Positions 5,190-64,000 of a DNA stretch of 64,000 nt are shown here, one piece after another. The notes beneath the pieces are model-generated. The model saw only the letters and a program-made list of their open reading frames with translations, ran no database searches and was not told where the DNA came from. The translations under genes were made by a program, and so were the position numbers. The stretch comes from Isurus oxyrinchus. Lineage: Eukaryota. The stretch spans positions 4,216,001-4,280,000 of the forward strand of contig JANJGN010000038.1 in assembly GCA_026770705.1 (NCBI GenBank), read 5' to 3'. Numbering within the stretch: the stretch's first letter is position 1; every line of letters starts with the position of its first letter.

Positions 5190-5400
5190 GGTAAACACAG
5201 AAAACGCTGAAATTATCAGCAGGTCAGATAGAATCTGTGGAGACAGAAACAGAGTGGTCTTCTCGAGACATTATGACCCTTCTTCAGATGGACTCGAAAC
5301 GTCAACTCTGTTTCTCTCTCCTTAGATGCTGTTAGGCCTGATGAGTTTTTCCAGCAATTTTTGTTTTTGTTTCAGATTTCCAGCATCCGCAGTATTTTGC
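5190..5400. mobile_element. Palindromic pair of Penelope-type terminal repeats with decayed hammerhead cores
   Basis: Two inverted arms (cagcagg..catctgtggag / ctcc..agatgctg..cctg.tgag); gacccttcttcag on one arm and gactcgaaacgtcaact on the other. Confidence 0.65.
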
Positions 5401-9012: not shown

Positions 9013-9907
9013 TCACTGTTTAATAAATTTAACAATTACAGAAAAGGGATATTTCACCACATTCTTCAATTGCTGAATTGAGTCTGGGTCACTGCATAAA
9101 TGGCCGTGTTAGTGCAACAACTTAGGAGCTGAATATAAATCCCAGTTCCTGCACAAACCTAGGAAGGTATACAGGAATAGCATCTAACAAATATAGTCTA
9201 TTACAAACAAAATGTATCATAAAACTACCCACAACAGGATAAAATTCCCCGATAAAGCAAACAGTAAAATGATGGATTTCCTGCGTTTCTCCATCTGTGG
9301 GTCCCTGGGTCTCTCCCCACTGCAGTGAGCCCGGAGTCTCCTGCGGGCTCTGCTCAACACTAAAATATATCTGACAGTTAAAGCGTTCAACATCAAAATC
9401 AAAACAAGTGGCGCAAATGGTGTTAAAATATAATGAAGACATTCGATTGCTGCCCACATTGATGAGAATTCAGCATCCGTCACTAATGTGCAAAACCAAG
9501 GAGCATTGGAAAGCGAATATTGACCTACATACATAAAGTACCAGAATGTATCCTTCACACAGAATAGCAGATTGACTGTTCCGAGAACCACAGCCGCCGT
9601 ATGCTCTGTGCAATATTTTTTTTCAACTTCTGGGAACAAATAGCCAGAAGTCTATCAAAGGTGAAAGAGACTGTGAACCAGACAGAACAATCTGTGGCCG
9701 CATAAAGCAGGACTGCATGGATATTATACACTTTAAACCTCGACAAGAACTGAAACTGAGCCCAGTAAAGAATAGCAATTTGCCTGAATATGAGATCAAG
9801 GATAACGACCAGTAGATCCGCGGTTGCCATGGACACCAGGTAAAGGGAAAGACATTTTGAGAGACCGCACCTTCCCGGAGACAGGGTCACAATAGTCAGT
9901 ATGTTCA
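9013..9907 (-). pseudogene. GPR139/GPR142-like GPCR pseudogene A, exon 2
   Basis: cttacag acceptor; VNILTIVTLSPGRCGLSKC, SFTFDRLLAIC, RARRRLR..DPQMEKRRKSIILLF and NTAIY; at least four frameshifts (~9620, ~9222, ~9132, ~9075). Confidence 0.9.
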
Positions 9908-18650: not shown

Positions 18651-21362
18651 GGCACTGGAATATATAAATATATTTTTTCAGAATATCTCTTAGAGAGAAA
18701 AAAATGCCTGATCTATAATTTACATCATTATATGACTCCAGAAAAAAGAGGATATAGAACGTTTTGAAAATTGACTCATGGGAATTTGAAGTCGTTCCTG
18801 TGCTGTAAGTTCACTATTGTGTCACATAGTTTGAGCTATCGAAGTCTTAGAGCAATTTCGGGCCTCAATTAGTTGCTTATCGAAAATATTACAATAGCTT
18901 CCAGAAAGAACCTGAATTGGCATCAAATTTGCAAACACAAAAATAGTTTCAAGCCCCTGGAAGAGTAACGATTGGTGTTTGGAATTAAAATTATTCTAGG
19001 ATTTATCCAGTTTACTCTTTTTTTTTTTGAGTGACATGAGTTGAAAGATGCTGTTCAGAGTCCGGAGATTTGCAAGCATTTTTAAATTATGTAAAATGAG
19101 GATTTCCTTCACCATCCATTGCTCCTTGTTCATGCCTCTACTGGTATCTTCTATTTAACTAACTTAGCCAGCCGTCACGTGTAGCTAATTGTGGACACTG
19201 ATGTGACTGGTAACTGATCAGTCACTGGACCAAAGAGTAATAGATAGTCGTTGAGCATGTGACCTTGATATTCATCACCAAGCGGTGTATAAAAGATCAA
19301 CTTAACACTGTTGTGTGATTGCCTTCTGAAATGTTAGGCATAAAAGCCTGTGTTTGGGGATCCTTATGGCCTTGGTAACTGCTTGAATGTAAACGTTTGT
19401 TAAGTGAATATGAACCTGAACTGTTTGAGGGAACAACTGCAGCGCCACCACTAGCGATACACGGTGGTGGTGGTATCACGGGTGTATGCGCAATGTTTAC
19501 TCCCCTCCTCCTTGCACCCTGACAGTGTTGTTGGGTTCTCCATTTTGATAGACTGTGCATTAATAAAATAAGTCAAAATAGCAGCCAATGTTCTTCCAGT
19601 TTGTCCGCTTCTATTTCCATTTAAAACGACATAAAATATATACAGATACATACGTGTTGATGTCGAAATGCATGTGGTTGTGTGGGTACGTGCGTGTTTG
19701 CTTGTGTGCAAGCACGCCTATGTGTGTACGCGTGTGTGTTTGTTTGTGTAGCATCTTTGACATGTGTCTATGCGCATGCCTGCCTGTGTTATTATAGTTC
19801 AGAGCTTCAACATTTTTTTTGACCAAGAGTCTGTTTATCTCCGCCTTGATGCCAGGTCATTTAAATCTGGCTCTTTCTATGCAAGGAGGTGGGAATGTGA
19901 CACATAAGTTTTCGTTTAACGTTGTGTGGTCTACGGTTAAACTATGTCATCAAGTAGCAGATGACAAGATTCACTGGAGCAGGAAGCATGATTTATGCTG
20001 CCAGAGAGTAACTGAGAGCTGTTAATTACCTTTGATCATAGATCCGTTGGTTTCTCTGACAATAAACTAAGAAGCGGGTATCCAATGACCCCTCCAGCTT
20101 GCAGCAGTTATAATCATTCAAAGGATTTCATTACAATTGTTTAACTTCCTTAACTTCTCCTTGCGCTTTTAGAACATAAAAAATTAAACATCTTATTGAT
20201 TAGAGAATGCTTAGAGGCCTGATTCTTTGTTCCAAATTTCTGTGAATTTCATGCTGTACGAGTGAAATTTTAACAGAGCAGAAGTTGAAAATTCAAAAGA
20301 CCTTTACATCTCCTGGATCTTCATCAAGCATCGTAAATACAGGGAAAGAAAAAATCACGTTTCTATCTCTTTCTTAAGATGTTATTTAAACAGATTCTGT
20401 ATTTCCTCTAACTGTATCACTAGATTAAAGGAGTGACTATTCTTCACTAGATACGCCCTTGTCATTAAGCAACCTGGGACACTCTGAACTATTGAAGGAC
20501 TTTGTATAAGTTTAGAAGGTGCTGTCTCCCAGTAACTATGAATGAATAATGAGATGGAATTGTGAAATGAATGTACAGCTTCTTTCCACTAATTGTCAGT
20601 TTCTATGCCTGTTTCCCTTTCCCTTGTCTAGGACTCTCCTTCAATTTATCTCTGTCTATTTGACTCTGTATCTATCCTTAACTCTTTTTTTTCTCATTTG
20701 CTCGCCTTGATCTCTCTGTGTGAAGAATATTCTTGCTCTCGCTCTGGTTAATTAGGCCAGGGTTGTTTCTAGATCGATTATTGCTCTGACATGGAATTCA
20801 TAGCTGTGCAATGGATTAGCTCCGATTCAATACAATGAAGACTAAATCCATCCCTCACTTTTGATTCAGTACTCGGAGGAACATAGTGTTTTTTTGAGTT
20901 GCCATTTTGTATCTATAGCTCTCTGTCCGTCTTCGAATTAAATACGTACAGAGAGAAAGGGAAGAGCCAAAAATATGCAGGAGAACAATGTCTTTATGTT
21001 TTTTTTCTCAGTTCAAACTGGTTAATAACAAAGACTAATCAACAGTGTTTGTGAAGCCGTCGCAAGAGGCTTGGATAAGGAGTGTAACGAAGCTTTGCTG
21101 CAAATATATAAGATTTTACTAACAACACATTTGGAGAACTGTGCTCAGTTTTGGTCCACCTAACTGGGGCTGGGTAGATCTGCCATAGATTGGTGCAACC
21201 AGATTCACCAGTCTCATTACAGCACGGAGCCGGAAAGAAGGGGAGGGGGGCGCTGTGGTGGCGGGGTTGGGGGGGGGAGTGGAATGGTGGGGGCGGGGAG
21301 GGAGGCATTCGACATACACAGTCTTTGCCGGACCTCCGGAGAGCAAACCAGTCAGATCAGCA

Positions 21363-21376
21363 ATATCATCTTCATC
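21363..21376 (+). repeat. Left target-site duplication ATATCATCTTCATC
   Basis: Exact 14-bp match to 22883-22896. Confidence 0.85.
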
Positions 21377-21394
21377 ATCGGCGGAGAAGAAAAG

Positions 21395-21433
21395 AGTTAA
21401 CGTTTCGAGTCTTCATGACCCTTCGACAGAACT
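21395..21433 (-). ncRNA. Minimal type I hammerhead ribozyme motif (unit 1, GUU triplet)
   Basis: AGUU-CUGUCGA-A-GGGUC-augaa-GACUC-GAAA-CG-UU-AACU. Confidence 0.6.
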
Positions 21434-21771
21434 TGATTTCGAGTCCAGGAAAGAGTTGAAATATAAGCTGGTTTAAGGTGTGTGGGGGGGGGGGGGGGGG
21501 GGCGGAGAGAGAGAGAGAGAGACAGAGGTGCAAACACTAGGAGGGAAATGGAAAGCAAAGAAGGTGAACAAGGCAACAGAGAGATACGGAAATCTTGTCG
21601 CAGAGAGGAACAGAACTTCTTCAAGGGGGTAGGCATTTCTTGAAGAGCAGTGGCAGTCAATTAAACACAGAGATAAAAACAAAGAGAACTGCGGATGCTG
21701 GAAATCCAAAACAAAAACAGAATTACCTGGAAAAACTCAGCAGGTCTGGCAGCATCGGCGGAGAAGAAAAG

Positions 21772-21810
21772 AGTTGACGTTTCGAGTCTTCATGACCCTT
21801 CGACAGAACT
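21772..21810 (-). ncRNA. Minimal type I hammerhead ribozyme motif (unit 2, GUC triplet)
   Basis: AGUU-CUGUCGA-A-GGGUC-augaa-GACUC-GAAA-CG-UC-AACU. Confidence 0.65.
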
Positions 21811-22150
21811 TGATTTCGAGTCCAGGAAAGAGTTGAAATATAAGCTGGTTTAAGGTGTGTGGGGGGGGGGGGGGGGGGGCGCGGAGAGAGAGAGAGAGAG
21901 ACAGAGGTGCAAACACTAGGAGGGAAATGGAAAGCAAAGAAGGTGAACAAGGCAACAGAGAGATACGGAAATCTTGTCGCAGAGAGGAATAGAACTTCTT
22001 CAAGGGGGTAGGCATTTCTTGAAGAGCAGTGGCAGTCAATTAAACACAGAGATAAAAACAAAGAAAACTGCGGATGCTGGAAATCCAAAACAAAAACAGA
22101 ATTACCTGGAAAAACTCAGCAGGTCTGGCAGCATCGGCGGAGAAGAAAAG

Positions 22151-22189
22151 AGTTGACGTTTCGAGTCTTCATGACCCTTCGACAGAACT
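22151..22189 (-). ncRNA. Minimal type I hammerhead ribozyme motif (unit 3)
   Basis: Identical to the unit 2 motif. Confidence 0.65.
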
Positions 22190-22745
22190 TGATTTCGAGT
22201 CCAGGAAAGAGTTGAAATATAAGCTGGTTTAAGGTGTATGGGGGGGGGGGCGCGGAGAGAGAGAGAGAGAGACAGAGGTGCAAACACTAGGAGGGAAATG
22301 GAAAGCAAAGAAGGTGAACAAGGCAACAGAGAGATACGGAAATCTTGTCGCAGAGAGGAACAGAACTTCTTCAAGGGGGTAGGCATTTCTTGAAGAGCAG
22401 TGGCAGTCAATTAAACACAGAGATAAAAACAAAGAGAACTGCGGATGCTGGAAATCCAAAACAAAAACAGAATTACCTGGAAAAACTCAGCAGGTCTGGC
22501 AGCATCGGCGGAGAAGTTGACTGCCACTGCTCTTCAAGAAATGCCTACCCCCTTGAAGAAGTTCTGTTCCTCTCTGCGACAAGATTTCCGTATCTCTCTG
22601 TTGCCTTGTTCACCTTCTTTGCTTTCCATTTCCCTCCTAGTGTTTGCACCTCTGTCTCTCTCTCTCTCTCTCTCCGCGCCCCCCCCCCCCCCTCCACACA
22701 CCTTAAACCAGCTTATATTTCAACTCTTTCCTGGACTCGAAATCA

Positions 22746-22784
22746 AGTTCTGTCGAAGGGTCATGAAGACTCGAAACGTCAACT
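22746..22784 (+). ncRNA. Minimal type I hammerhead ribozyme motif (inverted unit)
   Basis: Stem I AGTT 22746-49 / AACT 22781-84; core CTGTCGA 22750-56; stem II GGGTC/GACTC; GAAA 22773-76; predicted cleavage after C22780. Confidence 0.65.
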
Positions 22785-22882
22785 CTTTTCTTCTCCGCCG
22801 ATGCTGCCAGACCTGCTGAGTTTTTCCAGGTAATTCTGTTTTTGTTTTGGATTTCCAGCATCCGCAGTTCTCTTTGTTGTTT

Positions 22883-22896
22883 ATATCATCTTCATC
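22883..22896 (+). repeat. Right target-site duplication ATATCATCTTCATC
   Basis: Exact match to 21363-21376. Confidence 0.85.
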
Positions 22897-22914
22897 TTCT
22901 TCTTCATCATCATG

Positions 22915-23160
22915 AGAACCGAGTCAGCCTGAACCTATCAGGGTCAAGCTGTCTGGCTTAAATTTCAAACAATTCTTGGCAGTTAACTGTCCTTCGCCAT
23001 AGGTGGTGCATTATTCAGGGAAATGCCACTTGCCAACCAATCATCATTCTCCTCACATACAGTATAAATTGTGCTCCCCCCTCCCATGTATTTTTATTCT
23101 TGTAAGTTTCCTGATGAGTGCAGGGTGATAAGCTGAGACCTGTCTCTTTTTCAGAAATAC
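22915..23160 (+). mobile_element. Older Penelope-like terminal remnant (same family as 1-480)
   Basis: ttaaatttcaaaca..ggcagttaactgtc..ccacttgccaaccaatca..cagtataaattg..cctgatgagtg, the reverse complement of the window start. Confidence 0.5.
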
Positions 23161-24198
23161 TGAAGTTCTGTCCGAACAAAAACCAAAGTGTATTCTTTCT
23201 GCATTGAATAACAATGCGCAGTGTTGATTGTTGTATGAGTGTCCATGACACCAATGTTATATTGGTGTCCATCACACAACTTGCATCTGGTAAGGAACAG
23301 CATTTATTGGAGTCAATGAAATATTAAAGATCAATTGTGTCTATTAACTAACAAATGCCATTGATGTACCTCGATATTGAGGCCGGGCTATAGATATGAA
23401 TTTGGATTTTTTAAAATTTTGATTCGTTGCCTTTGTTTGTCTGCCCCACCCCTGCCAGCATCGCACCTATCGGCTGCTGGAAGACATCAAACTGAGGAAA
23501 CTTACATTTGCAATTTTTGTGTTGTTTGTAAATCTCGGAGTCATACTCATGTGCAGCTAAACGTGGTGGTAGGATGTAACAAATGTCTTGAATATACATC
23601 ACATACTTCCGTACAGCATGGAATTCTGACACAGGATACAACTTCAACATGTCTTCTGATCGCCAGTGTGTCTCCTGGACAAGAATAATATTCGTCAAAG
23701 TGTTCCTTTTCCTCATAAATGTTCAACCAAGTAAGTATTTCATGCGATTGTAACGCTTTTATTTTGTTAACTGTATTGTTATTTTTCCTCCAATTTTTCT
23801 TCACTCCATTGGTGAGGTCAGCTTCCTCGACTTCGCTCACTGGTCAGTGAGTGTTCGTACAGTATCTAAATTAGTCACAAGCTGACCTGTCATTGTCTCA
23901 GCGGGCCGGAGAAGGGCTTCTCTATTTCCTGCAGAAATGGTAGCCTTGGCTGAACACTGCCAGAAGGAATTTACACCGATGATGGCCTGGGATCAGTTAA
24001 CTGAGGGGTGAAATCGCTGAAGCTCCCTGTTTTTGTTGTTGTCTTCACACTCGAAATGCAGTCAACCGTTGTATTGAAGGGAATGATTTAACGTGAGCTC
24101 GTGTGTGTGCGCGTGTGCGTGTGCATTGGAAAGCCTATTTCGTCCAAATGAAAAAAATCTAAAAGTTGCATTGATAACATTCTGTTATTGTTTTCCAG

Positions 24199-24506
24199 AA
24201 TGCGGCCAACAGGAGAGACTTTCCCAAACACCCTCAATTGTAGCAGTGAGTGAAGGAGATACTGCGGTGTTGTCATGTATCTACTCAGCGACATACACAG
24301 CTGTTTACCTATTCTGGTACGTACAGTACTCGGGAAAAGGCCTTCAGTATGTGCTGCTCAGACACACGGCTGGGAATGAAGAGAATGCACCAGCTTTTGC
24401 AAAGCGCTTTTCAGCCGTACAGGATAGGAGCAACACAAACATCCCTTTGAACATCACAGACACCCAGCTCTCTGACTCAGCCATGTGTTACTGCGCGGCT
24501 ATGAAG
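24199..24506 (+). CDS. TRAV/DV: T-cell receptor alpha/delta-type V segment 1 (open V exon; no intact leader found)
   Basis: ttttccag acceptor; LSQTPSIVAVSEGDTAVLSC..YLFWYVQYSGKGLQYVL..RFSA..LNITDTQLSDSAMCYCA with C23, W41 and C104; 23-RSS follows; no nearby D or J RSS, as would be expected in an IgH cluster. Confidence 0.88.
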
Positions 24507-24545
24507 CACCATGTTACATAAATCCTTACCACTGGTACAAAAACT
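24507..24545 (+). other. V(D)J recombination signal sequence, 23-bp spacer
   Basis: Heptamer CACCATG 24507-13, 23-bp spacer, nonamer ACAAAAACT 24537-45. Confidence 0.9.
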
Positions 24546-39883: not shown

Positions 39884-41130
39884 GTAAAGTATTAGGGTTA
39901 GTTACCAGTTACCAGAATCATTTTTCATTCTATCACTTCTTTAATTTAGCTGTACTGCTTCTCTAAGGTTCACCCCATTAAAAGGATAATTTGTTTTTTT
40001 TATAATGTTTTCCCCTTTTTGCAGTATCCTTATCTCCACGTTTAGTGCATTCTTCTTTTAAATGAGATTAAACCTTCCCTTTCCTTGCAATATTACTGGT
40101 CATTACTGGTCTCTTTTCTCCACTTTAAGGCTATAACTTTTCCCCTTCACGAGAACAGTTTCTTCCCATTGCCACTATACTTACTTCCATGTCAGGGATT
40201 ACTATGTTTGCTTCGCCAATGCCGTTTTATCTCTTTAACTAAAACTTTTCTCCCAACTTAGCAGTGCCGCCTCTCAGTCTAAACGTAATTAGATGTTGTT
40301 ATTGTCATTATTAACGTGGGCGAAGTATTTAGCACACTAATATCACAGTGCAATGTAAATCAATTGTATTATTGACACTGGCACCATGGATGATTTATCA
40401 CGCTGTAAATATAGCTCTTTGGTGTTATTGACAGAGCTGTTCAATTACCTCACTTTGCCATGTGCATATATTGCTCCTTGCGCTGGAATGTGAATAACAG
40501 CTATTTCTTAAGTAAGATTTTGTACTCACGACCAGTCCTCAGTCTTTTGTTTTAGCTGAAATATAGCATATCGGGCAGTGCAACGTTGCTGAAGTCCAAC
40601 AGTTGGGCTTGAACGCTAAACCTTTTGACTCAAAAGTGAGATTGCTGTAAACTGAGCCATAGTAAGCATGATCAGCTTTACTCGTGGCTGTGAAGCCTTG
40701 TTCCTTTGACTTCGAATTGTTACAGCTCAGATGCATCACATCTCCTTCATCTTCTTTTCAGTTAAGTAGTAGCTTTTTTTTTGCTGAACTTTTTTCAAGC
40801 TCTATAATGTATTTGTTAACCTTCGATTTTCCAATGTTTCAGAGTATTGTTATATTTTCCCATCTCTAAACGTTGAATGAGAACAACATTGACTGTATTT
40901 CAGGGTCACAATGCAGGACGTTCAATGTTCACCTTGAGTTAGCCCTTAGTGTTGCTGACAGTACAGAACAGATTGCCGTGTTTTAGGATATTTTCCTCCA
41001 GATCATCTTTCTGACATGCTAACTTGTTCCTCTCTTTTCAACTGCTGCCTGACTGAGAATTTCCAACATTTTATGTTCTAAATTTCTTTCCCAAAATTGG
41101 CTATTTGCTGGCTGCGTTTCGCTGTCACAG

Positions 41131-42041
41131 CTAATCTGGTCGTGATTGTGATACTGACTCGAGGAAGATGCGGTCTCTCCAAATGTATCACTTACTATTT
41201 GATGTCCATGGCCGTGACGGATCTTCTTGTCGGGATCACAGTAGTGATATTAAACCAGATTATAGGTATTTATTTCCCGTTCAGTCTCCTGGCCATCACT
41301 CCGGTCTTCAGCCTCAGACTTGTGCTAAATTATGGAGTCATCGATTCTTCTGTCTGGGTAACAGTGGCTTTCACCTTTGACCGATTTGTAGCCATTTGCT
41401 GCCAGAAGCTGAAAATTAAATATTGCACTAAGAAAATGGCGGCTGCGGTGATAGCAACTGTCTCTGTACTTAACTGCGTTAAAAGCATTCCCTTGTATTT
41501 TAGGTGTGAGCTTGCCTTTATCATTGACAATATACCCTGGCAATGCAATTCAAAATCAATATTTTATACGGCACCTGAATGGGTCGCTTATGAAAGCATA
41601 ATTGCCGTTTTAACCCTTTGCCTCTCCTTCGTCCTTATTTTACTACTCAATGCTCTGACCATCAGACACATTGTAACGGCCAGTCGAGCCCGCAGGAGAC
41701 TCCGGATCCAGAGCAATGGAGAGAATCAAAGTGACCCAGAGATGCAGAAAAGAAGGAAGTCCATCGTTTTGCTCTTCTGTATCTCGGGCAGTTTCATCCT
41801 GTTATATTTGTTAAGACTTATAAACTTCCTCTATGTCCGAATTGCGAATCTTAGCTATGCAGACTCTACCAATTTCAATGAATCAAATTTTCTTATGGAG
41901 GAAATCGCACGTATGCTTCAGCTCCTGAATTCTTGCATCAATCCGTTTATTTATGCAGGGACCCAGAGTAAATTCAGAGAAGAGTTAAAGAATGGTGTGA
42001 AATTCCCATTGAATCTGCTTGTTAAATTATTTAAAAGATGA
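41131..42041 (+). CDS. GPR139/GPR142-like class A GPCR gene B, exon 2 (spliced product 329 aa, intact)
   Basis: gtcacag acceptor; with exon 1 gives seven hydrophobic segments, TM2 MAVTDL, AFTFDRFVAIC, TM7 NPFIY and helix 8 KFREELK; 79+911=990 nt open frame. Confidence 0.93.
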
Positions 42042-54999: not shown

Positions 55000-55906
55000 T
55001 TATCGTCCAAATAATTTAACAATTTCAAGTAGTGGATATTTCACCCCATTCTTTAACTCTTCTCTGAATTTACTCTGGTCCCTGCATAAATAAACAGGTT
55101 TGCGCAGGAACTCAAAAACTGAAGCATATATGTTTTTTCCTCAAGAATGAATGTTGAAAGATTGATTTCAGAGCTTGATAAGTATTTAACATTTCCAATT
55201 TGCACATAGAGGAAAGTTATAAATATTAACAAATATAACAGGATGAAACTTCCCGATATACAGAAGAGTAAAATGATGGACATTGTCCGCTTCTCCATCT
55301 CAGGGTCACGCTGATTGTCTCCATTTCTCCGGGTCTGGAGTCTCCTGCGAGCTCTACTGGCTGCGGCAATGTGTCTGACTGTCAGTACATTGGGCAGTAA
55401 AATCAGAATGAATGGGAGACAAGGGGTTAAAATGTGTTGAATGCAGTCATAGGCGATCCATGCAAGTGAGGTATAAAATATCACTTTTACATCGCAGCAC
55501 CAGGGTACATTGTCAATTATGTACAAAGATTCGTATATAAAATACTGGAAGGTGTTTTTGACACAGCTGATTGCGCGGATTGTCCCTATAACCCATGCCG
55601 CCGTTTTTTTGGAACAACATTTTACTTTCAGATTCGGGCATCAAATGGCCACAAATCGATCAAAGGTGAAAGCTGTAGTTAACCAGGCAGAGCTGTCTAT
55701 GGCTGAATATATTAGGGCGTCACAGAGACTGCATACTGGTGTGATTGACAGGAAACTGAGTGGGAAATAAATACCAGCAATCCAGTTCAATATCACAGCG
55801 GTTATAATGAGCAGATCTGTCACCGCCAGGGATTGTAAATAATAGATTATACAGGTGGAGAGGCCGCATTTCACTCGAGAAAGGATCACAATCACCGCCA
55901 GGTTAG
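55000..55906 (-). pseudogene. GPR139-like GPCR pseudogene C, exon 2
   Basis: ttgcag acceptor; ANLAVIVILSRVKCGLS..AFTFDRFVAI* (TGA at 55641-43), same frame resumes; 1-bp deletion near 55078; ancestral stop at 55000-02. Confidence 0.9.
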
Positions 55907-59560: not shown

Positions 59561-59994
59561 TTGGAAAAATTGTGACATCATTTGCTGCAGGACCAATCGA
59601 CGAAGGCCATGTTATTGTGAAGTCATACACTGCTCGTGCCTGCTGTTTATTAAAAAGAGCGTTTCAATTGAATGAAAAGATGACTTCCGTTCTCATTAAA
59701 ATAGCCACTCAATTTCAACATTCATTGAACCGTAACATATATCGACCGTAATTGATAATTTCCCGCACTGATTCAGCAGCGAGCCGTCCACAGCCCCCAC
59801 TCAGCGGGAAAGTTTGTTCCGCCTGTGACTCCTGACTGAGGACTGTGGGCCCGTGGGAGTGAGTTCTTGGCATCTTATTGGGGCCGTGCGTCCATTGAGT
59901 GTTTCCGAGACTGGGAAAGGACAGAGAAACACAGGAGCACAACGGTGGTGGCTAAAAATAAATGCAGCTAACAGTGGAGAGATATCCTGAACGG

Positions 59995-60235
59995 TAAAAG
60001 CAAAATACTGCGGATGCAGGAAATCTGGAACACAGACAGAAAATGCTGGAAAAACGCAGCACGTCTAACAGCATCTGTGGACAGAAAGGCAGAATTAACG
60101 TTTCAAATCCGTATGACTTTTCTTCAGAGAAGAAGACTCTGAAGAAGAGTCATACGGACTCGAAATATTAACTCTGTCTTTTCCTTCGCAGATGCTGTCA
60201 GACCTGCTGAGCTTTTATTGCCTTTTCTGTTGTTG
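59995..60235. mobile_element. Palindromic pair of Penelope-type termini with two hammerhead motifs
   Basis: Plus: CTGAAGA-A-GAGTC-atacg-GACTC-GAAA-TATT-AACT (60139-60173); minus: CTGAAGA-A-AAGTC-atacg-GATTT-GAAA-CGTT (~60095-60127). Confidence 0.7.
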
Positions 60236-60544
60236 TTTGAAATGTCCTGAACGGTAGTGTGGAAGAGGATGGGAGTCAGATTGGGAGAGATAAAGGCTTT
60301 AACAGTAACTTCACCGATTAACAAACAGCATTCCGAGTCTTTAAGACGCGTCGGTAATTTTTCCCTGCCTCACTCTTCCTACTTTCAACAACAACGAACC
60401 TCGCCCGTGAACTCTGAGATTTTAGAGAAAATGTTGGAAGATATTAGGTCGAGAAGAGAACTTCTCCTGATATTCCCATGATTGGGAGGCGCTGAAGGAA
60501 CCACTGAAAAAGCAATGAAGCAGATGGAACAAAACCCGAGGGTA

Positions 60545-60730
60545 ATAAAAGAATAAAACTGCAGATGCTGGAAATCTGAAAGAAACACAGAAAACTCTGC
60601 AGGTCTGACAGCATCTGTGGAGACAGAAACAAAGTTATAACGTTTCATCAGACAGACTCGAAACGTCAACTCTATTCCTTCTTCCACAGGTGCTGTCCGC
60701 CTGCTGAGTTTTTGCAGCATTTTCTGTATT
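60545..60730. mobile_element. Palindromic pair of Penelope-type termini (centre deleted)
   Basis: Inverted arms around aacgtttcatcag / gactcgaaacgtcaact; counterpart of 5190-5400. Confidence 0.65.
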
Positions 60731-62189
60731 TACGTAACCGTGGGGTGATGTTCATTTAGTTCAGGGAGATTGTATCAGAAGGATTGGAGCAGGCAGAGAG
60801 GATCCCTGGGGTTATGCTCAGTGACAACAGAGAGATGGTATCAGTAGGAATGAGCTGATCAGGAAACAGTTCACAATCGAAGGAAAAGGGAGGATGACAG
60901 GGCTAATGGATTTAAAAGAAAAGTTGGAAGTGGACAGTCAGTGTGTATTTACCGGAATGTGGACCGTATATATTCTTAACAGGAAGGTGTTGGTTTGGTG
61001 GGGTGCGAGTAATGCCTGTTTGTGTATTTAAGAAATACTTCGAAGCCAGTGTCTCAGTATTCGATAGGCCCCAGGATCAAGGAACAAGCCCCATGTTTAT
61101 GTTTACTTGCTGTATCACGTGGAACCCCATCTTTGGACATTTTCGTGGTTTTGTCCCCCTGGTGTGTGCAAGAGACCTAAAGCTCTGTAATAATTTACAG
61201 GATTTTCACTCGATCATATATCAGTGCCAGACACGTTCGAGTCTCTGGAATCGCCCCTTGGTTAATGCTCCCAATTATGACTGTGTTATATATCTAGCCA
61301 GCGGCACCCCTGCCTTCAAAGTGTTTAATTGGACAATGCAGAGGGATCTTAACCCTGTTATGACCCTGGCTGTACCAACCGTGGGAGTGTTGGCTAGGGC
61401 AGTGTAAAGGAAGATTTCTGATCCAACATCCTGTCATGCGTCAGCCTCTGATGAAGCCGAACGCTACTGTATAAAATTACCTGACATGTGACTGTGACCG
61501 CCCAGAGTATGAGTCAAATCACAGAGGTGACCCTCCCTGTTCAATCATTCCGCCTCAGGCAATTGCCAGAAACAGGCAGAGGTAAAGGTCCCTTTGCACG
61601 GAAGGGGCGATGGGTGGCCCATTGGGGCCTTCTGGGCAAATAGATCCCAGACAGGACTGGTGAAATAGGGAGAAATGTGTAATAGGGAAAATGGAGCAGT
61701 GTCGATGGACCGCAGAAAAAGGAATTCAGCAAAGCCATAGTTAGTTCACTTTTCATTCCACATTCATTAGCAATTTCAGAGAATATTTTACATGAAAGTT
61801 TATGTTATGGTTAACAGACGTGAATATAATGCCTGAGCGTCACATTGGGAACATGCACTCTGAGTTGGTAAACCGTATGTACCACGGAAACATAGATCAG
61901 AAAGAGAAAACAGCGGCTCAACGGAAAGAGAAGGGAACAATAGTGAAAACAGAACGAGAAAAGTTAATTAAAGACAAATGGAATTCTAAGTCCATGGAAA
62001 TTAGATGCTCCAATTTCATTACGACCATTAACACCTCGCACATTTCAAACAGACAAACGGAAATTCTATGGCAGGTTCGGTTACAGATCCGGAATTACAA
62101 AGTGAGAACATTTCACTTTTACAGTGACCAAGAGAACATATTTTAAATTGGAATTAAAGGAAAAGCTACGGGGTCCGAAATTCAACCGA

Positions 62190-62198
62190 TCACTTGAT
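62190..62198 (-). CDS. IGH: IgH membrane exon TM2 (IK*), second copy
   Basis: ctcttttacag|ATC AAG TGA on the minus strand. Confidence 0.78.
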   Translation of the reverse strand: MK

Positions 62199-62337
62199 CT
62201 GTAAAAGAGGGAGAATATAATGAAGCAGATGTTTATGATCTGGTGCATTTATGTTATAGATCTTAATCATTGAAACATTAAGAAAGTTTTCAAACCGCTT
62301 CTGTCAGATTGTCGTGTTAGTAAATTCAATTTCTCAC

Positions 62338-62465
62338 ATTTACCAGAGTGACGGCAGTTCTGTAGAAAATGCTCAGGACGAACAGGGCAATGGATGTGGA
62401 AGCTGTTGTGCAGACGTTCCCGTTATCGTCCTCATTGTCTTCAATCCACATGCGTTCTGTGGAAT
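62338..62465 (-). CDS. IGH: IgH membrane exon TM1, second copy, probably decaying
   Basis: ctgtag acceptor; (D)STERMWIEDNEDDNGNVCTTASTSIALFVLSIFYRTAVTLVN; gtgaga donor; same 128-bp length as copy 1. Confidence 0.85.
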
Positions 62466-63299
62466 CTACAGGAATATAACCGAGGAAATTTAATTACATT
62501 GTTAGAATCCGAGGGCATCTTACTTTTTAAAATATATATTAAATCTATTGTATTTCCCTCAAACTATTGATTTGTCTTCTCATTAAATTTTCAGTGCATA
62601 TCTGGTAATAAATTGGCGACTCTCAGCAATCTCTGCCTGTCACTAACCCCACAGCTGTTCTCACTTTACTTTCCTCATCCTGCCCGTATTGGAAAAAAGT
62701 GTCTTTTCCCCCTTCGGTACCAGTTCTTTTTGGATCAATTTCGTGCGGCCTATCATTGGATTATATTATGCAGTAAACTGCAGGACGTTTAATAATTGAT
62801 AACAATTATTTTAATGGTAGGTACTGATCGCTATTAATTCTGAGATTCTGAACTCTGTAAATTTTCAACTTGTTTATTTATTTGTGGTAGTAATGTTTGG
62901 CACATAGTTAACTTAAATCAGTTTATAATTCAGAACATTGCTTCAGTGTGTTTCCTGGGTCTTTATGTGCTCCCAGAAATTTTTGGAAGATGTGCCCGCT
63001 AAAAAAGGACACTTGAAATAGACTTCCGTCTGGCATTTGTTTTTTTTTTAAATATGTATTTGCGTATAGCGTGCAGGGGTGTCTCGTGCTCTGCATTTAA
63101 CTGTGTTTGTGTGCCATGTTGTATGAATGCTGATGTGTATGTTGATGTGGAATCAATGTTGATATGCTTATTTATGTGTGGCGCACCTGTGTATGTTTGT
63201 TTGTTCATTTGTAAATGTTTGTGTATCAGTGTGCCTGTTTATGTGTTGATGTTTATGTTGACTTATTAATGCCTGTGTCAAAGAGTTTGTTTACGTCCA

Positions 63300-64000
63300 T
63301 AAAAGCAAAATCCTGTGGATGCTGCAAATCTGAAACAAAAACAAGAATAGCTGCAAAAACTCAGCAGGTCTGACATCATCTGCGGAGGGGAATAGAGTTA
63401 ATGTTACGAGTCCGGATGACTCTTCATCAGAACTGAGGAAAAATAGAAATGAGGTGAAATATAAGCTGGTTGAGGGGGGTGGGATAGGTAGAGCTGGATA
63501 GAGGGCCCGTGATAGGTGGCGGCAAAGAAGAGATTTCCAATGATGTCAACGAGTAAAGGATAAAGGAGTGTTGATGGTGGAAATGTGATGGGGTTGCGGT
63601 GGGGGGAAGAGACCGAAACAGGCTAAAAGGTGAAGAAAAAATGAATGGAAATCAATTTAAAAATAATTGAAATAGGTGGGAAAAGGAAAATATATTTAAA
63701 AAATCATATTTTAAAAATTATAAATTTTTGGAAATAGGGGATCAGAATGGGGGTGGGGATGGAGGAGAAAATTGATGATCGGAAGTTGTTGAAATCAATG
63801 TTAAGTCTGGAAGTCGGTAAAGTGCCTAATCAGGAGATGAGGTGCTGTTCCTCCAGTTTGCGTTGACCTTCCCAGAACATTGCAGCAGGCCAAGGACGGA
63901 CATGTGGGCATGAAAGCAGGGTGGTGTGTTGAAATGGCAAGTGACCAGGAGGTCTGAGTCATGCTTGCGGACAGACTGGTGTCTGCGTATAGTCCAATAT
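63300..64000 (-). mobile_element. Penelope-like element 3' end: GIY-YIG C-terminus, 3' UTR and hammerhead-bearing terminus
   Basis: Minus strand reads HQSVRKHDSDLLVTCHFNTPPCFHAHMSVLGLLQCS..QRKLEEQHLIS*LGTLPTSRLNIDFN; the 3' UTR shares gaaatataagctggtt and the downstream terminus with the 21.4 kb array. Confidence 0.8.
63396..63434 (-). ncRNA. Hammerhead ribozyme motif (canonical CUGAUGA, GAAA mutated to GUAA)
   Basis: AGUU-CUGAUGA-A-GAGUC-auccg-GACUC-GUAA-CA-UU-AACU. Confidence 0.6.

What the first reader, a model, noticed from the sequence alone, without database searches (positions are those of the whole stretch)
21363..22896. Very recent tandem hammerhead retroelement (retrozyme-like) with TSD and terminal inversion
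Seen: three almost identical 371-379 bp units, then 13 bp of a fourth, then an inverted near-complete unit, all bracketed by an exact 14-bp duplication (ATATCATCTTCATC). Each unit has AGUU-CUGUCGA-A-[GGGUC/GACUC stem]-GAAA-CG-UC-AACU. Known: Penelope-like elements (PLEs) carry minimal type I hammerheads whose stem III is only a short palindrome (here ACGU) and which cleave as dimers; PLE insertions often show tandem termini with an inverted segment. Inference: one retrotransposition event copied a ~375-nt non-coding, possibly circular, RNA several times (rolling circle or template jumping) using a PLE RT/GIY-YIG in trans. Neighbouring units would supply dimer partners in cis and release unit-length RNA. 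The core has U at the normally invariant A6, so it is either a non-canonical active variant or an inactive ribozyme in a still-mobile element.
Basis: partly seen in the sequence, partly recalled or inferred. Interest (0 to 1): 0.82.

Follow-up and report, generated by a model that had tools for sequence, protein, structure and literature searches.

The report
Recent Penelope-type hammerhead repeat insertion
A 1.5-kb block of four near-identical 375-bp repeats carrying a degenerate hammerhead motif is a recent insertion made by Penelope-type retrotransposon machinery, a known kind of element that here shows clearly how such insertions are built.

Summary
There are three direct units (377/379/371 bp), 13 nt of a fourth and an inverted 368-nt unit, flanked by an exact 14-bp repeat. 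Each unit carries a 39-nt Penelope-type minimal hammerhead with U at core position 6.

The layout matches published Penelope-like element (PLE) insertions: head-to-tail copies, an inverted copy at the 5' side and a low-complexity target. The inverted arm starts at the family's canonical 3' end, 104 nt past the predicted cut. The array starts internally, with 4 nt of microhomology. This fits priming of reverse transcription from both nicked DNA strands, as shown in vitro for an Anolis PLE (PMC11167929).

One contig from the same species joins 21373 to 22885, an apparent empty site, so the insertion is probably polymorphic. That contig implies a 6-bp duplication rather than 14 bp.

Nothing here supports a circular RNA template or an active ribozyme. 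The units differ at sites that include a known family polymorphism, which favours an uncleaved multimeric transcript. Published data show that hammerhead catalysis is dispensable for PLE insertion.

Non-LTR retrozymes derived from PLE terminal repeats are already described, including in one cartilaginous fish. This scan had already noted the U6 hammerhead family and a similar array elsewhere in this genome. Verdict: a new member of a known kind, of moderate interest.

The parts
21363..21376 (.). Left copy of the exact 14-bp flanking repeat. Under the 6-bp reading the true target-site duplication is 21374-21379 (ATCATC).
   Evidence: (D6)
21377..21753 (-). Unit 1 (377 bp), the 3'-most unit of the sense array. 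Its outer end is internal to the element, 19-22 nt past the predicted cut, with 4-nt GATG microhomology to the target. Its cut triplet is GUU.
21754..22132 (-). Unit 2 (379 bp). It has two private transitions, one of which equals the majority state of genomic family reads.
22133..22503 (-). Unit 3 (371 bp). It has a shorter poly-C tract and one private transition.
22504..22516 (-). 13 nt of a fourth unit, the 5' end of the sense array. It begins at the 10th nucleotide past a predicted cut site.
22517..22884 (+). Inverted arm of 368 nt, nearly one unit. Its outer end (22884) coincides with the canonical 3' terminus of the dispersed family, 104 nt past the predicted cut.
   Evidence: (I1-I6)
22883..22896 (.). 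Right copy of the 14-bp repeat. Under the 6-bp reading, 22883-22884 are the element's last two letters and the duplication is 22885-22890.
22746..22784 (+). Minimal hammerhead-like motif of the inverted arm: helix I 4 bp, core with U6 (22753), unpaired A, helix II 5 bp, GAAA, ACGU palindrome, predicted cut after C22780.
22151..22189 (-). Same motif in unit 3 (U6 at 22182; predicted cut between 22155 and 22154).
21772..21810 (-). Same motif in unit 2 (U6 at 21803; predicted cut between 21776 and 21775).
21395..21433 (-). Same motif in unit 1 (U6 at 21426; U instead of C at position 17, 21399).
22848..22884 (+). Candidate 37-nt PLE 'tail'. Many genomic copies end at 22846-22848 with unrelated AT-rich flanks, while others run on to the long end at 22884.
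   Evidence: loose ends: 2090 and 3249 reads at 22846/22848; 3058 at the equivalent 21708; PMC11167929
63299..63503 (-). Context: an older diverged copy of the same 3' region, with a canonical CUGAUGA core and the same 3' end. An ORF remnant resembling the C-terminus of PLE ORFs lies upstream (about 63760-64000).
   Evidence: Pfam negative

Best explanation
This is one recent insertion made by the reverse transcriptase/endonuclease of an autonomous Penelope-like element acting in trans. The RNA copied came from a non-coding, tandemly repeated ~375-nt element whose 3' ~220 nt are the hammerhead-bearing terminal region (pseudo-LTR) of an abundant PLE family.

Proposed steps:
1. The target, a low-complexity ATC/TTC stretch, was nicked on both strands a few bp apart (6 bp, or 14 bp).
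2. Both 3'-OH ends primed reverse transcription.
3. The minus-strand end primed at the family's canonical start site (22884, 104 nt past the hammerhead cut) and copied 368 nt.
4. The plus-strand end primed internally, through 4 nt of microhomology 19-22 nt past a cut site, and copied 3.03 units.
5. The two cDNAs were joined head to head at 22516|22517.

The template was most likely an uncleaved multimeric transcript of a pre-existing array. The U6 hammerhead is probably a weak or inactive descendant of the PLE ribozyme, and its catalysis was not needed.

Shown: the anatomy, the homology of the ends, family abundance and the empty-site contig. Inferred: the order of events, the nature of the template and ribozyme inactivity.
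For: - Anatomy and near-identity of the four copies.
- The outer end of the inverted arm aligns exactly with the 3' end of dispersed older copies.
- The other end is internal and shares GATG with the target.
- The geometry of the two arms fits extension from two staggered nicks, and PAc protein nicks and extends both strands in vitro (PMC11167929, text read).
- Head-to-tail copies plus an inverted 5'-truncated copy at the 5' side, and a bias for microsatellite targets, are stated PLE hallmarks (PMC8557442 passages). PLE TSDs of 8-10 bp or none, and trans-mobilisation by pLTRs alone, are reported in PMC3846280 (passages).
- A contig of the same species joins 21373 to 22885 with 79 and 82 nt on either side (X1 record 2). 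Its private letter at 22919 is also in 5 of 6 reads of another individual (X21).
- Relative to flank depth of about 8, the tail/hammerhead part reaches depths of thousands and the unit interior hundreds.
- The units differ by 5 substitutions. One of them (unit 2) equals the state seen in 104 of 146 genomic reads at the equivalent site.
- Hammerhead-dead mutants insert normally, and unprocessed multi-copy RNA is the substrate in vitro (PMC11167929).
Against: - No read shown to me spans a junction of the filled allele.
- The empty-site contig could come from a paralogue rather than an allele. Its right part has 3 mismatches in 82 nt and runs into another repeat.
- I could not fetch an autonomous parent element. 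The window holds no RT or GIY-YIG ORF recognisable by Pfam.
- The origin of the 145-nt unit interior is unknown.
- The array's internal start site does not match either of the two family end clusters.
- PAc initiates without homology to the target, whereas 2-4 nt of microhomology are seen here.
- Both arms are close to whole numbers of units (3.03 and 0.97). A circular template could explain this more naturally than chance.
- Five substitutions could also be polymerase errors.
Confidence: 0.7

Rival explanations
1. First reader's model. Unit-length ~375-nt RNA is released by (dimeric) hammerhead self-cleavage and circularised by a host ligase. A PLE reverse transcriptase then copies it several times round by rolling circle. 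On this view the U6 core is an active non-canonical variant.
For: - Both arms are near whole numbers of units: 1140 nt is 3 units plus 13 nt, and 368 nt is one unit minus about 10 nt.
- The 5' end of the sense array lies only 9 nt from a predicted cut site.
- This is the published life-cycle model for metazoan retrozymes (PMC7229834 passages; PMC4209133 discussion).
- A natural A6C hammerhead keeps activity with Mn2+ (PMC7151607 passages).
- The PAc hammerhead cleaves only when its protein is present (PMC11167929).
Against: - The units are not identical: 5 substitutions, one matching a common family polymorphism.
- No arm end lies at a cut site.
- The unit RNA is not unusually self-paired (z +0.40 and +0.75), whereas metazoan retrozyme circles are described as highly self-paired (PMC7229834).
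- Changes at A6 give low activity (PMC3088659 passages).
- The available helix III is a 4-bp duplex.
- No RNA evidence: the one 'RNA?' run is only a guess.
Confidence: 0.15
2. The array grew at the DNA level. A single or dimeric pseudo-LTR fragment was inserted and then expanded locally by unequal crossing-over or replication slippage, as proposed for satellite birth from PLE termini.
For: Li et al. 2026 (preprint 10.64898/2026.07.22.740005, discussion read) propose local amplification of PLE terminal sequences into tandem repeats. The unit lengths differ in a slippage-prone poly-C/(CT)n tract.
Against: If the insertion is still polymorphic, there has been little time for several rounds of unequal exchange. 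The array-specific variants are shared by all four copies, including the inverted one, which unequal exchange cannot produce. Earlier notes report similar TSD-bounded arrays with an inverted arm elsewhere in this genome (s1-896960, unchecked).
Confidence: 0.08
3. Assembly artefact: a chimeric or fold-back long read, or a collapsed or expanded repeat, created the array.
For: No read-level support for the filled allele was visible. PLE tandem/inverted structures are known to trouble assemblies (PMC8557442 passage). The only bridging contig is the empty form.
Against: The block ends exactly at the family's canonical terminus and is bounded by a short duplication of a target that exists uninterrupted in another contig. 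The inverted junction is not a zero-spacer palindrome: the nearest arms are 106 nt apart (I4). This speaks against a missed-adapter fold-back, a criterion I recall rather than tested.
Confidence: 0.03

Closest known systems
Metazoan non-LTR retrozymes (Cervera & de la Pena 2020, PMC7229834; Li, Clavereau & Pollet 2026 preprint 10.64898/2026.07.22.740005)
   Same: Short tandem repeats of 150-450 bp with a type I hammerhead in every unit, GC below 50% (47% here), no coding capacity, a TSD longer than 4 bp, and sequence kinship with PLE terminal repeats. The preprint reports such elements in one chondrichthyan, with a mean consensus length of 363 bp.
   Different: The core has U6, so the motif would fail descriptor searches that require the canonical core. 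The hammerhead is the minimal PLE type, without the loop-loop contacts of 'canonical' retrozyme ribozymes. The unit RNA is not unusually self-paired. Circular or linear unit RNA has not been shown. An inverted arm is part of the insert.
Penelope-like element insertions and their pseudo-LTR hammerheads (Cervera & de la Pena 2014, PMC4209133; Craig et al. 2021, PMC8557442; Arkhipova et al. 2013, PMC3846280; Frangieh et al. 2024, PMC11167929)
   Same: Minimal hammerhead with an unpaired base after A9, a G10.1-C11.1 pair and a palindromic 15.1-16.1. The ATG sits in loop II next to stem II. The insertion end lies about 100 nt past the cut. There are head-to-tail copies with an inverted truncated copy at the 5' side, a short variable TSD and a low-complexity target. 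Two alternative family ends lie 37 nt apart (the 'tail').
   Different: There is no RT/GIY-YIG ORF between the repeats, so the element is non-autonomous. One arm starts at a non-canonical internal site with microhomology. The core has U6.
Non-autonomous Chlamys elements such as MRC1 of Chlamydomonas (PMC8557442 passage)
   Same: Non-coding PLE derivatives that share the 3' end with autonomous families and make multicopy head-to-tail insertions. They are polymorphic within species.
   Different: A different PLE clade with an N-terminal endonuclease and no canonical hammerhead, in a green alga rather than a vertebrate.
Twin priming of LINE-1
   Same: Two cDNAs primed from the two nicked strands, one at the RNA 3' end and one internally, joined to give an inverted plus direct structure with a TSD.
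   Different: A different enzyme family. For PLEs, extension from both strands appears to be an intrinsic property of the protein (PMC11167929). The template here is a tandem repeat.

Membership tests
PLE minimal hammerhead (min-HHR, PMC4209133) | Core boxes C3 U4 G5 A6 N7 G8 A9, G12 A13 A14, A15.1-U16.1, H17 | tested here: not met
   All positions match except A6, which is U in 4 of 4 array copies. H17 is C in three copies and U in one. Of the older window copies, 3 have A6, 1 has U6 and 1 has G6.
PLE minimal hammerhead (min-HHR, PMC4209133) | Unpaired nucleotide between position 9 and 10.1, and a G10.1-C11.1 pair | tested here: met
   A at 22757; G22758 pairs with C22772.
PLE minimal hammerhead (min-HHR, PMC4209133) | No helix III hairpin; palindromic 15.1-16.1 that allows a two-motif helix III | tested here: met
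   ACGU in the array and AUAU in the old copy at 60.1 kb, a CG to UA change that keeps the palindrome. The duplex is only -3.1 kcal/mol.
PLE minimal hammerhead (min-HHR, PMC4209133) | Short helix I (4-5 bp) and a longer helix II | tested here: met
   Helix I is 4 bp. Helix II is 5 bp including one G-U, shorter than the 6-8 bp described for Schistosoma and Drosophila. The fold with helices I and II is -6.7 against an MFE of -7.9 kcal/mol. There is no energy signal against shuffles (z 0.25 and 0.64).
PLE minimal hammerhead (min-HHR, PMC4209133) | Self-cleavage (weak, as dimer or with protein) | not testable with these tools
   Needs in vitro transcription. Rfam gives no hammerhead hit, but it also misses the canonical-core copies of the family, so it is uninformative.
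Penelope-like element insertion | Head-to-tail (partial) tandem copies with an inverted 5'-truncated copy adjacent at the 5' end (PMC8557442) | tested here: met
   Read in hammerhead sense (minus strand), the order is inverted arm, then 3.03 sense units.
Penelope-like element insertion | Insertion 3' end at a fixed internal RNA site about 85-120 nt past the hammerhead cut, with an optional 30-40 nt 'tail' (PMC11167929) | tested here: inconclusive
   The inverted arm and older copies end 104 nt past the cut. Reads show a second cluster of ends 37 nt earlier. The sense array starts elsewhere, 19-22 nt past a cut.
Penelope-like element insertion | Short, variable TSD; AT-rich or microsatellite target | tested here: met
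   The duplication is 6 bp, or 14 bp, in an ATC/TTC low-complexity stretch. Published TSDs are 8-10 bp or none (PMC3846280).
Penelope-like element insertion | RT plus GIY-YIG ORF (autonomous element) | tested here: not met
   No such ORF lies in or near the array: 10 ORFs of at least 130 aa were scanned and none is RT or EN. The unit frames are short. The old remnant at 63.8-64.0 kb matches only 5 unannotated eukaryote fragments and no Pfam family. The block is therefore non-autonomous at best.
Metazoan non-LTR retrozyme | Tandem units of about 150-450 bp, GC below 50%, each with a type I hammerhead; at least two consecutive complete motifs (Li et al. 2026 methods) | tested here: inconclusive
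   Size (371-379 bp), GC (47%) and motif position are met. 'Complete motif' fails if the canonical A6 is required.
Metazoan non-LTR retrozyme | [quoted passage not shown] | tested here: inconclusive
   Self-pairing is not above shuffles. One small run that is only guessed to be RNA has contigs on the unit interior (83 nt, 1 mismatch) while most flank bins are empty. No test for circles was possible.
Metazoan non-LTR retrozyme | Sequence kinship with PLE pseudo-LTRs (Li et al. 2026) | tested here: met
   About 220 of 375 nt align with dispersed PLE-tail copies in the window. One of these copies lies downstream of a PLE-like ORF remnant.

The most novel reading that the evidence does not exclude
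The U6 core is not a dead ribozyme. It would be a selected, conditionally active variant (protein-assisted or Mn2+-preferring, like the natural C6 hammerhead) of a PLE/retrozyme system that is still transposing in a cartilaginous fish. Arrays like this one would then give unit-length circular RNAs that are copied by rolling circle, which would explain why both arms are near whole numbers of units.
Probability: 0.15. Interest if true: 0.7.

Novelty: new member of a known kind. Interest (0 to 1): 0.4.

Why it matters
PLE transposition is still poorly understood in vivo. This locus is a young and probably polymorphic insertion in which both junctions, the head-to-head joint and the empty site can all be read. 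It looks like a genomic record of the both-strand priming and internal initiation that have so far been shown only in vitro for one lizard element. It also belongs to a very abundant family whose hammerhead carries U at a normally invariant position. That agrees with the in vitro finding that ribozyme catalysis is not needed for insertion, and it offers a natural test of that finding. It does not reveal a new kind of element.

Tried and rejected
- Rfam: the whole window at gathering threshold and the locus at E up to 10 gave no hammerhead. The best hit, MIR840 at 22377-22549, is just the hairpin made by the inverted repeat. A control on 59900-64000, which holds canonical-core copies, was also negative, so I dropped Rfam as evidence either way.
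- My first DNA pattern had a spacer one base too long and found nothing. It is uninformative.
- Scan of metagenome contigs with a 20-nt tail motif: the 9 loci are all chance matches inside bacterial histidine-kinase-like genes, with no homology beyond 20-22 nt. Viral contigs gave 0.
- Protein route to other unit copies: the 121-aa unit ORF gave 16 candidates and 0 hits.
- Route to the autonomous parent: the 57-aa ORF remnant gave 8 hits at E up to 0.001. Only P0003 and P0008 are meaningful; the others are Kelch, ankyrin or Ig repeat proteins. A follow-up search gave 5 unannotated fragments. The GIY-YIG identity of the remnant rests only on my recollection of PLE ORF ends.
- Idea that the unit interior is the decayed end of the PLE ORF: a CSS...LEE match is the top local hit against 3 of 3 fragments, but E is 0.17-1.2. 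At the DNA level, 27 of 300 shuffles score as well. Not supported.
- Thermodynamic signal for the motif or the unit: none.
- A nested-structure energy for the two-motif hammerhead could not be computed because the pairs cross.
- I considered and rejected a missed-adapter fold-back artefact, a Helitron or DNA-transposon origin (no such termini; recalled criteria, not tested), and a chance origin of the flanking repeat.
- Copy numbers are only relative to flank depth. A flank depth of about 8 after reading 1.9 Gb of run X21 does not fit a multi-gigabase genome, and I cannot explain it.
- Supplements were closed and I did not ask for them. Supplementary Tables 1-2 of Li et al. 2026 (which chondrichthyan, which families), the supplementary alignments of PMC4209133 (core exceptions) and Figs S1-S2 of PMC11167929 may already cover this family or bear on U6.
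- 'Not in print' rests. No paper in the library links hammerhead, Penelope and sharks beyond the items cited, and none mentions an A6U natural variant.
Full report
WHAT IS THERE

Window 21363-22896 holds a 1.5-kb block of one ~375-bp unit. TRF reports a single array at 21376-22516 (period 379, 3.0 copies, 97% matches). The repeat finder gives copy spacings of 377/379/371 bp and an inverted arm that is 98% complementary to the direct units. BLAST of unit 2 against the window gives 98.4/100/97.1% identity for the three units, a short fourth piece, and inverted pieces of 290 and 78 nt ending at 22884.

In a four-way alignment each copy has only one or two private transitions, apart from length changes in a poly-C/(CT)n tract. 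The 39-nt motif occurs four times, on the minus strand in the three direct units and on the plus strand in the inverted one. U stands at core position 6 in all four, and U replaces C at position 17 in unit 1.

THE MOTIF

The motif reads: helix I (4 bp), CUGUCGA, one unpaired A, helix II (5 bp, one G-U), GAAA, then the palindrome ACGU with the cut expected after the next C. Cervera & de la Pena 2014 (PMC4209133, parts 1-2 of the text read) define the PLE minimal hammerhead by four things:
- the core boxes;
- an unpaired base between positions 9 and 10.1;
- a G10.1-C11.1 pair;
- a palindromic 15.2-16.2 with no helix III hairpin.

All are met except A6.

The motif is homologous, column by column, to older diverged copies elsewhere in the window (near 5.2, 25.0, 44.9, 60.1, 60.6 and 63.4 kb). 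Three of these keep A6, one has U6 and one has G6. The copy at 60.1 kb keeps the palindrome through a CG to UA change.

Rfam finds no hammerhead here, but it also misses the canonical-core copies, so it decides nothing. Energies give no signal. The motif folds no better than shuffles (z 0.25 and 0.64). The fold with helices I and II is 1.2 kcal/mol above the MFE, and the only inter-unit helix III is a 4-bp duplex of -3.1 kcal/mol. That is what the literature describes for these weak ribozymes.

On A6: passages of PMC3088659 say that changes at this position give low activity. Passages of PMC7151607 show that a natural C6 variant is nearly dead in Mg2+ but active in Mn2+. I found nothing on a natural U6.

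THE FAMILY

About 220 nt of the unit, from the poly-C tract through the hammerhead to the end, align with the dispersed copies. Their 3' ends fall exactly where the inverted arm ends, at 22884. One old copy (63299-63503, minus) lies downstream of a frameshifted ORF remnant (63760-64000). The longest unbroken piece of that remnant matches a 37-40-aa block in five unannotated eukaryote ORF fragments. Pfam recognises none of them. I take the remnant to be the end of a PLE ORF from memory only.

Reads of an independent individual of the same species (X21) give a depth of about 8 on the flanks. On the tail/hammerhead part the summed depth is in the tens of thousands, and on the unit interior it is about 2,000. 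So there are thousands of tail copies and on the order of 100-300 interior copies at 92% likeness or more. These are rough figures, because the flank depth itself is unexplained.

At one interior site, 1946 of 2090 reads carry the bulk state and 144 carry the array's state. The array therefore belongs to a minor subfamily that has further members. A second species (X11; its flank differs by 20 of 365 letters) has the family at similar depth.

HOW THE INSERT IS BUILT

Read in hammerhead sense (minus strand), the block is: the inverted arm, then 3.03 sense units. Craig et al. 2021 (PMC8557442, passages) describe this as typical of PLEs: partial tandems, often with an inverted 5'-truncated copy at the 5' end, and a bias for microsatellite targets. 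Arkhipova et al. 2013 (PMC3846280, passages) report TSDs of 8-10 bp or none, and mobilisation of foreign inserts by pseudo-LTRs alone.

Frangieh et al. 2024 (PMC11167929, parts 1-2 read) show the following for an Anolis Poseidon element:
- The protein nicks and extends both strands.
- Reverse transcription starts at two internal RNA sites 111-118 nt into the ORF. The cut lies 26 nt past the start codon, so these sites are 85-92 nt past the cut.
- The stretch between the two sites is the optional 30-40-nt 'tail'.
- Hammerhead-dead RNAs insert normally.
- Unprocessed multi-copy RNA is the substrate.

This locus compares as follows:
- The canonical end is 104 nt past the predicted cut.
- Many genomic copies end 37 nt earlier, at 22846-22848, with unrelated AT-rich flanks (2090 and 3249 reads; 3058 at the equivalent site of a direct unit).
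- An ATG sits in loop II, next to stem II.
- The two arms point away from the two ends of the target, as expected if each nicked strand primed its own cDNA.

The inverted arm began at the canonical site. The sense array began 19-22 nt past a cut, where GATG is shared with the target. The arms meet at 22516|22517, with the sense array starting at the tenth nucleotide past a cut.

EMPTY SITE AND TSD

In Logan contigs of a run of the same species, one 161-nt contig lies with letters 1-79 on 21295-21373 (no mismatch) and letters 80-161 on 22885-22966 (3 mismatches). Two of the three mismatches fall in a flanking repeat. The third (22919) is also seen in 5 of 6 reads of X21. This is an uninterrupted target, most simply an allele, so the insertion is probably polymorphic and very young.

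The skip is 1511 nt, not the 1520 nt expected for a simple 14-bp TSD. The implied target has a 9-bp periodicity over 21 nt, and only 6 letters fit both sides of the joint. With that target, the filled allele needs a 6-bp duplication and no other event. The 14-mer then arises from the periodicity plus the element's last two letters. The alternative is a 14-bp TSD plus an independent 9-bp slippage in the empty allele. It is not excluded, and earlier unchecked notes mention 14-bp TSDs for related mini-elements (s1-897380, s1-900762).

No read or contig shown to me spans a junction of the filled allele.

THE TEMPLATE

A single circle copied by rolling circle should give identical units. Here there are 5 substitutions in about 1.5 kb of a probably polymorphic insert. 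One of them (unit 2) equals the state of 104 of 146 genomic reads at the equivalent site. That favours a multimeric transcript of a slightly heterogeneous source array. Such a transcript would have kept at least three internal hammerhead sites uncut, in line with a weak U6 core and with PMC11167929.

Against this, both arms are close to whole numbers of units, and one arm begins 9 nt from a cut site. These two coincidences keep the circle model alive at about 15%. The unit RNA is not unusually structured, whereas metazoan retrozyme circles are described as highly self-paired (PMC7229834, passages).

WHAT IS KNOWN, AND THE VERDICT

Metazoan non-LTR retrozymes were described in 2020, with PLEs proposed as the mobilisers (PMC7229834). 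A 2026 preprint shows that they derive from PLE pseudo-LTRs and finds them in one chondrichthyan, with a mean consensus of 363 bp (10.64898/2026.07.22.740005; results, methods and discussion read). Its pipeline needs a recognisable hammerhead core, so a U6 family may have been missed. Its supplements, which I could not see, would tell.

This scan had already noted the U6 family (s1-869593) and a similar array with an inverted arm (s1-896960) on other DNA of this genome.

The locus is therefore a new member of a known kind. Its value lies in being a clean, young, apparently polymorphic example that mirrors in vivo what was shown in vitro. Interest is 0.4.

The organism is coded in the tools.

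Noticed in passing
window 21432-21433 joined to 22745-22747 (reads, not this locus): Many genomic copies of the family are perfect fold-backs whose axis lies exactly at the first nucleotide of hammerhead helix I. For the joint 21433|22746 there are 16 contigs in X1, 36 reads in X21 and 4 contigs in X11; for 21432|22746 there are 13 contigs, 7 reads and 6 contigs. Either a palindromic mini-element is itself amplifying, or cDNA synthesis often ends or snaps back at the 5' edge of the ribozyme.
   Followed up: partly
window 5209-5351, 60017-60249, 60546-60731: There are three older head-to-head inverted pairs of the same PLE tail (71-76% complementary arms, 7 nt between the arms in two of them). 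Fold-back insertions of this family are therefore long-standing.
   Followed up: partly
window 63760-64000 (-): A frameshifted ORF remnant lies upstream of an old hammerhead copy. It matches a short block in five unannotated eukaryote ORF fragments but no Pfam family. It is probably the C-terminus of a PLE ORF, but this is not confirmed.
   Followed up: partly
alignment A1 of the four units (21377-22884): Four of the five substitutions that distinguish the units are C to T on the hammerhead-sense strand, and the fifth is G to A. The sense strand is C/T-rich (32% C, 36% T), so with n = 5 this may be chance. It could also point to deamination of the RNA or of the sense DNA strand.
   Followed up: no
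window 22916-23083: The right flank is itself a moderately repeated element (X21 depth about 80-265 against about 8). A shared boundary at 22991 is seen in both species.
   Followed up: no
window 20900-21320 and 23084-23400 (run X21): Flank depth is about 8 after only 1.9 Gb of one run was read. This does not fit a multi-gigabase genome if the flanks are single-copy, yet the flank variants look like ordinary haplotype differences. Unexplained; it makes all copy-number estimates rough.
   Followed up: no
window 22377-22549 (-): The Rfam hit to plant MIR840 (35.4 bits, E 0.00026, far below its gathering score of 150) is merely the long hairpin formed by unit 3 and the inverted arm.
   Followed up: yes
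window 24093-24521 (+); 41097-42041 (+); 55053-55526 (-); 9217-9639 (-): Neighbouring coding potential: an immunoglobulin V-set domain ORF lies 1.2 kb downstream of the block, and there are three rhodopsin-type 7TM receptor ORFs (one complete, 314 aa). The block therefore sits in a gene-bearing region.
   Followed up: partly
run X20: A coral metatranscriptome run holds a small share (0.07) of the sampled words of this stretch, presumably the repeat family from fish material in the sample.
   Followed up: no
window 21230-21312: A G-rich low-complexity stretch just left of the insertion weakly resembles the poly-G/GA tract of the unit's antisense strand (63-77% over 30 nt). It is either chance low complexity or an older decayed fragment of the family.
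   Followed up: no
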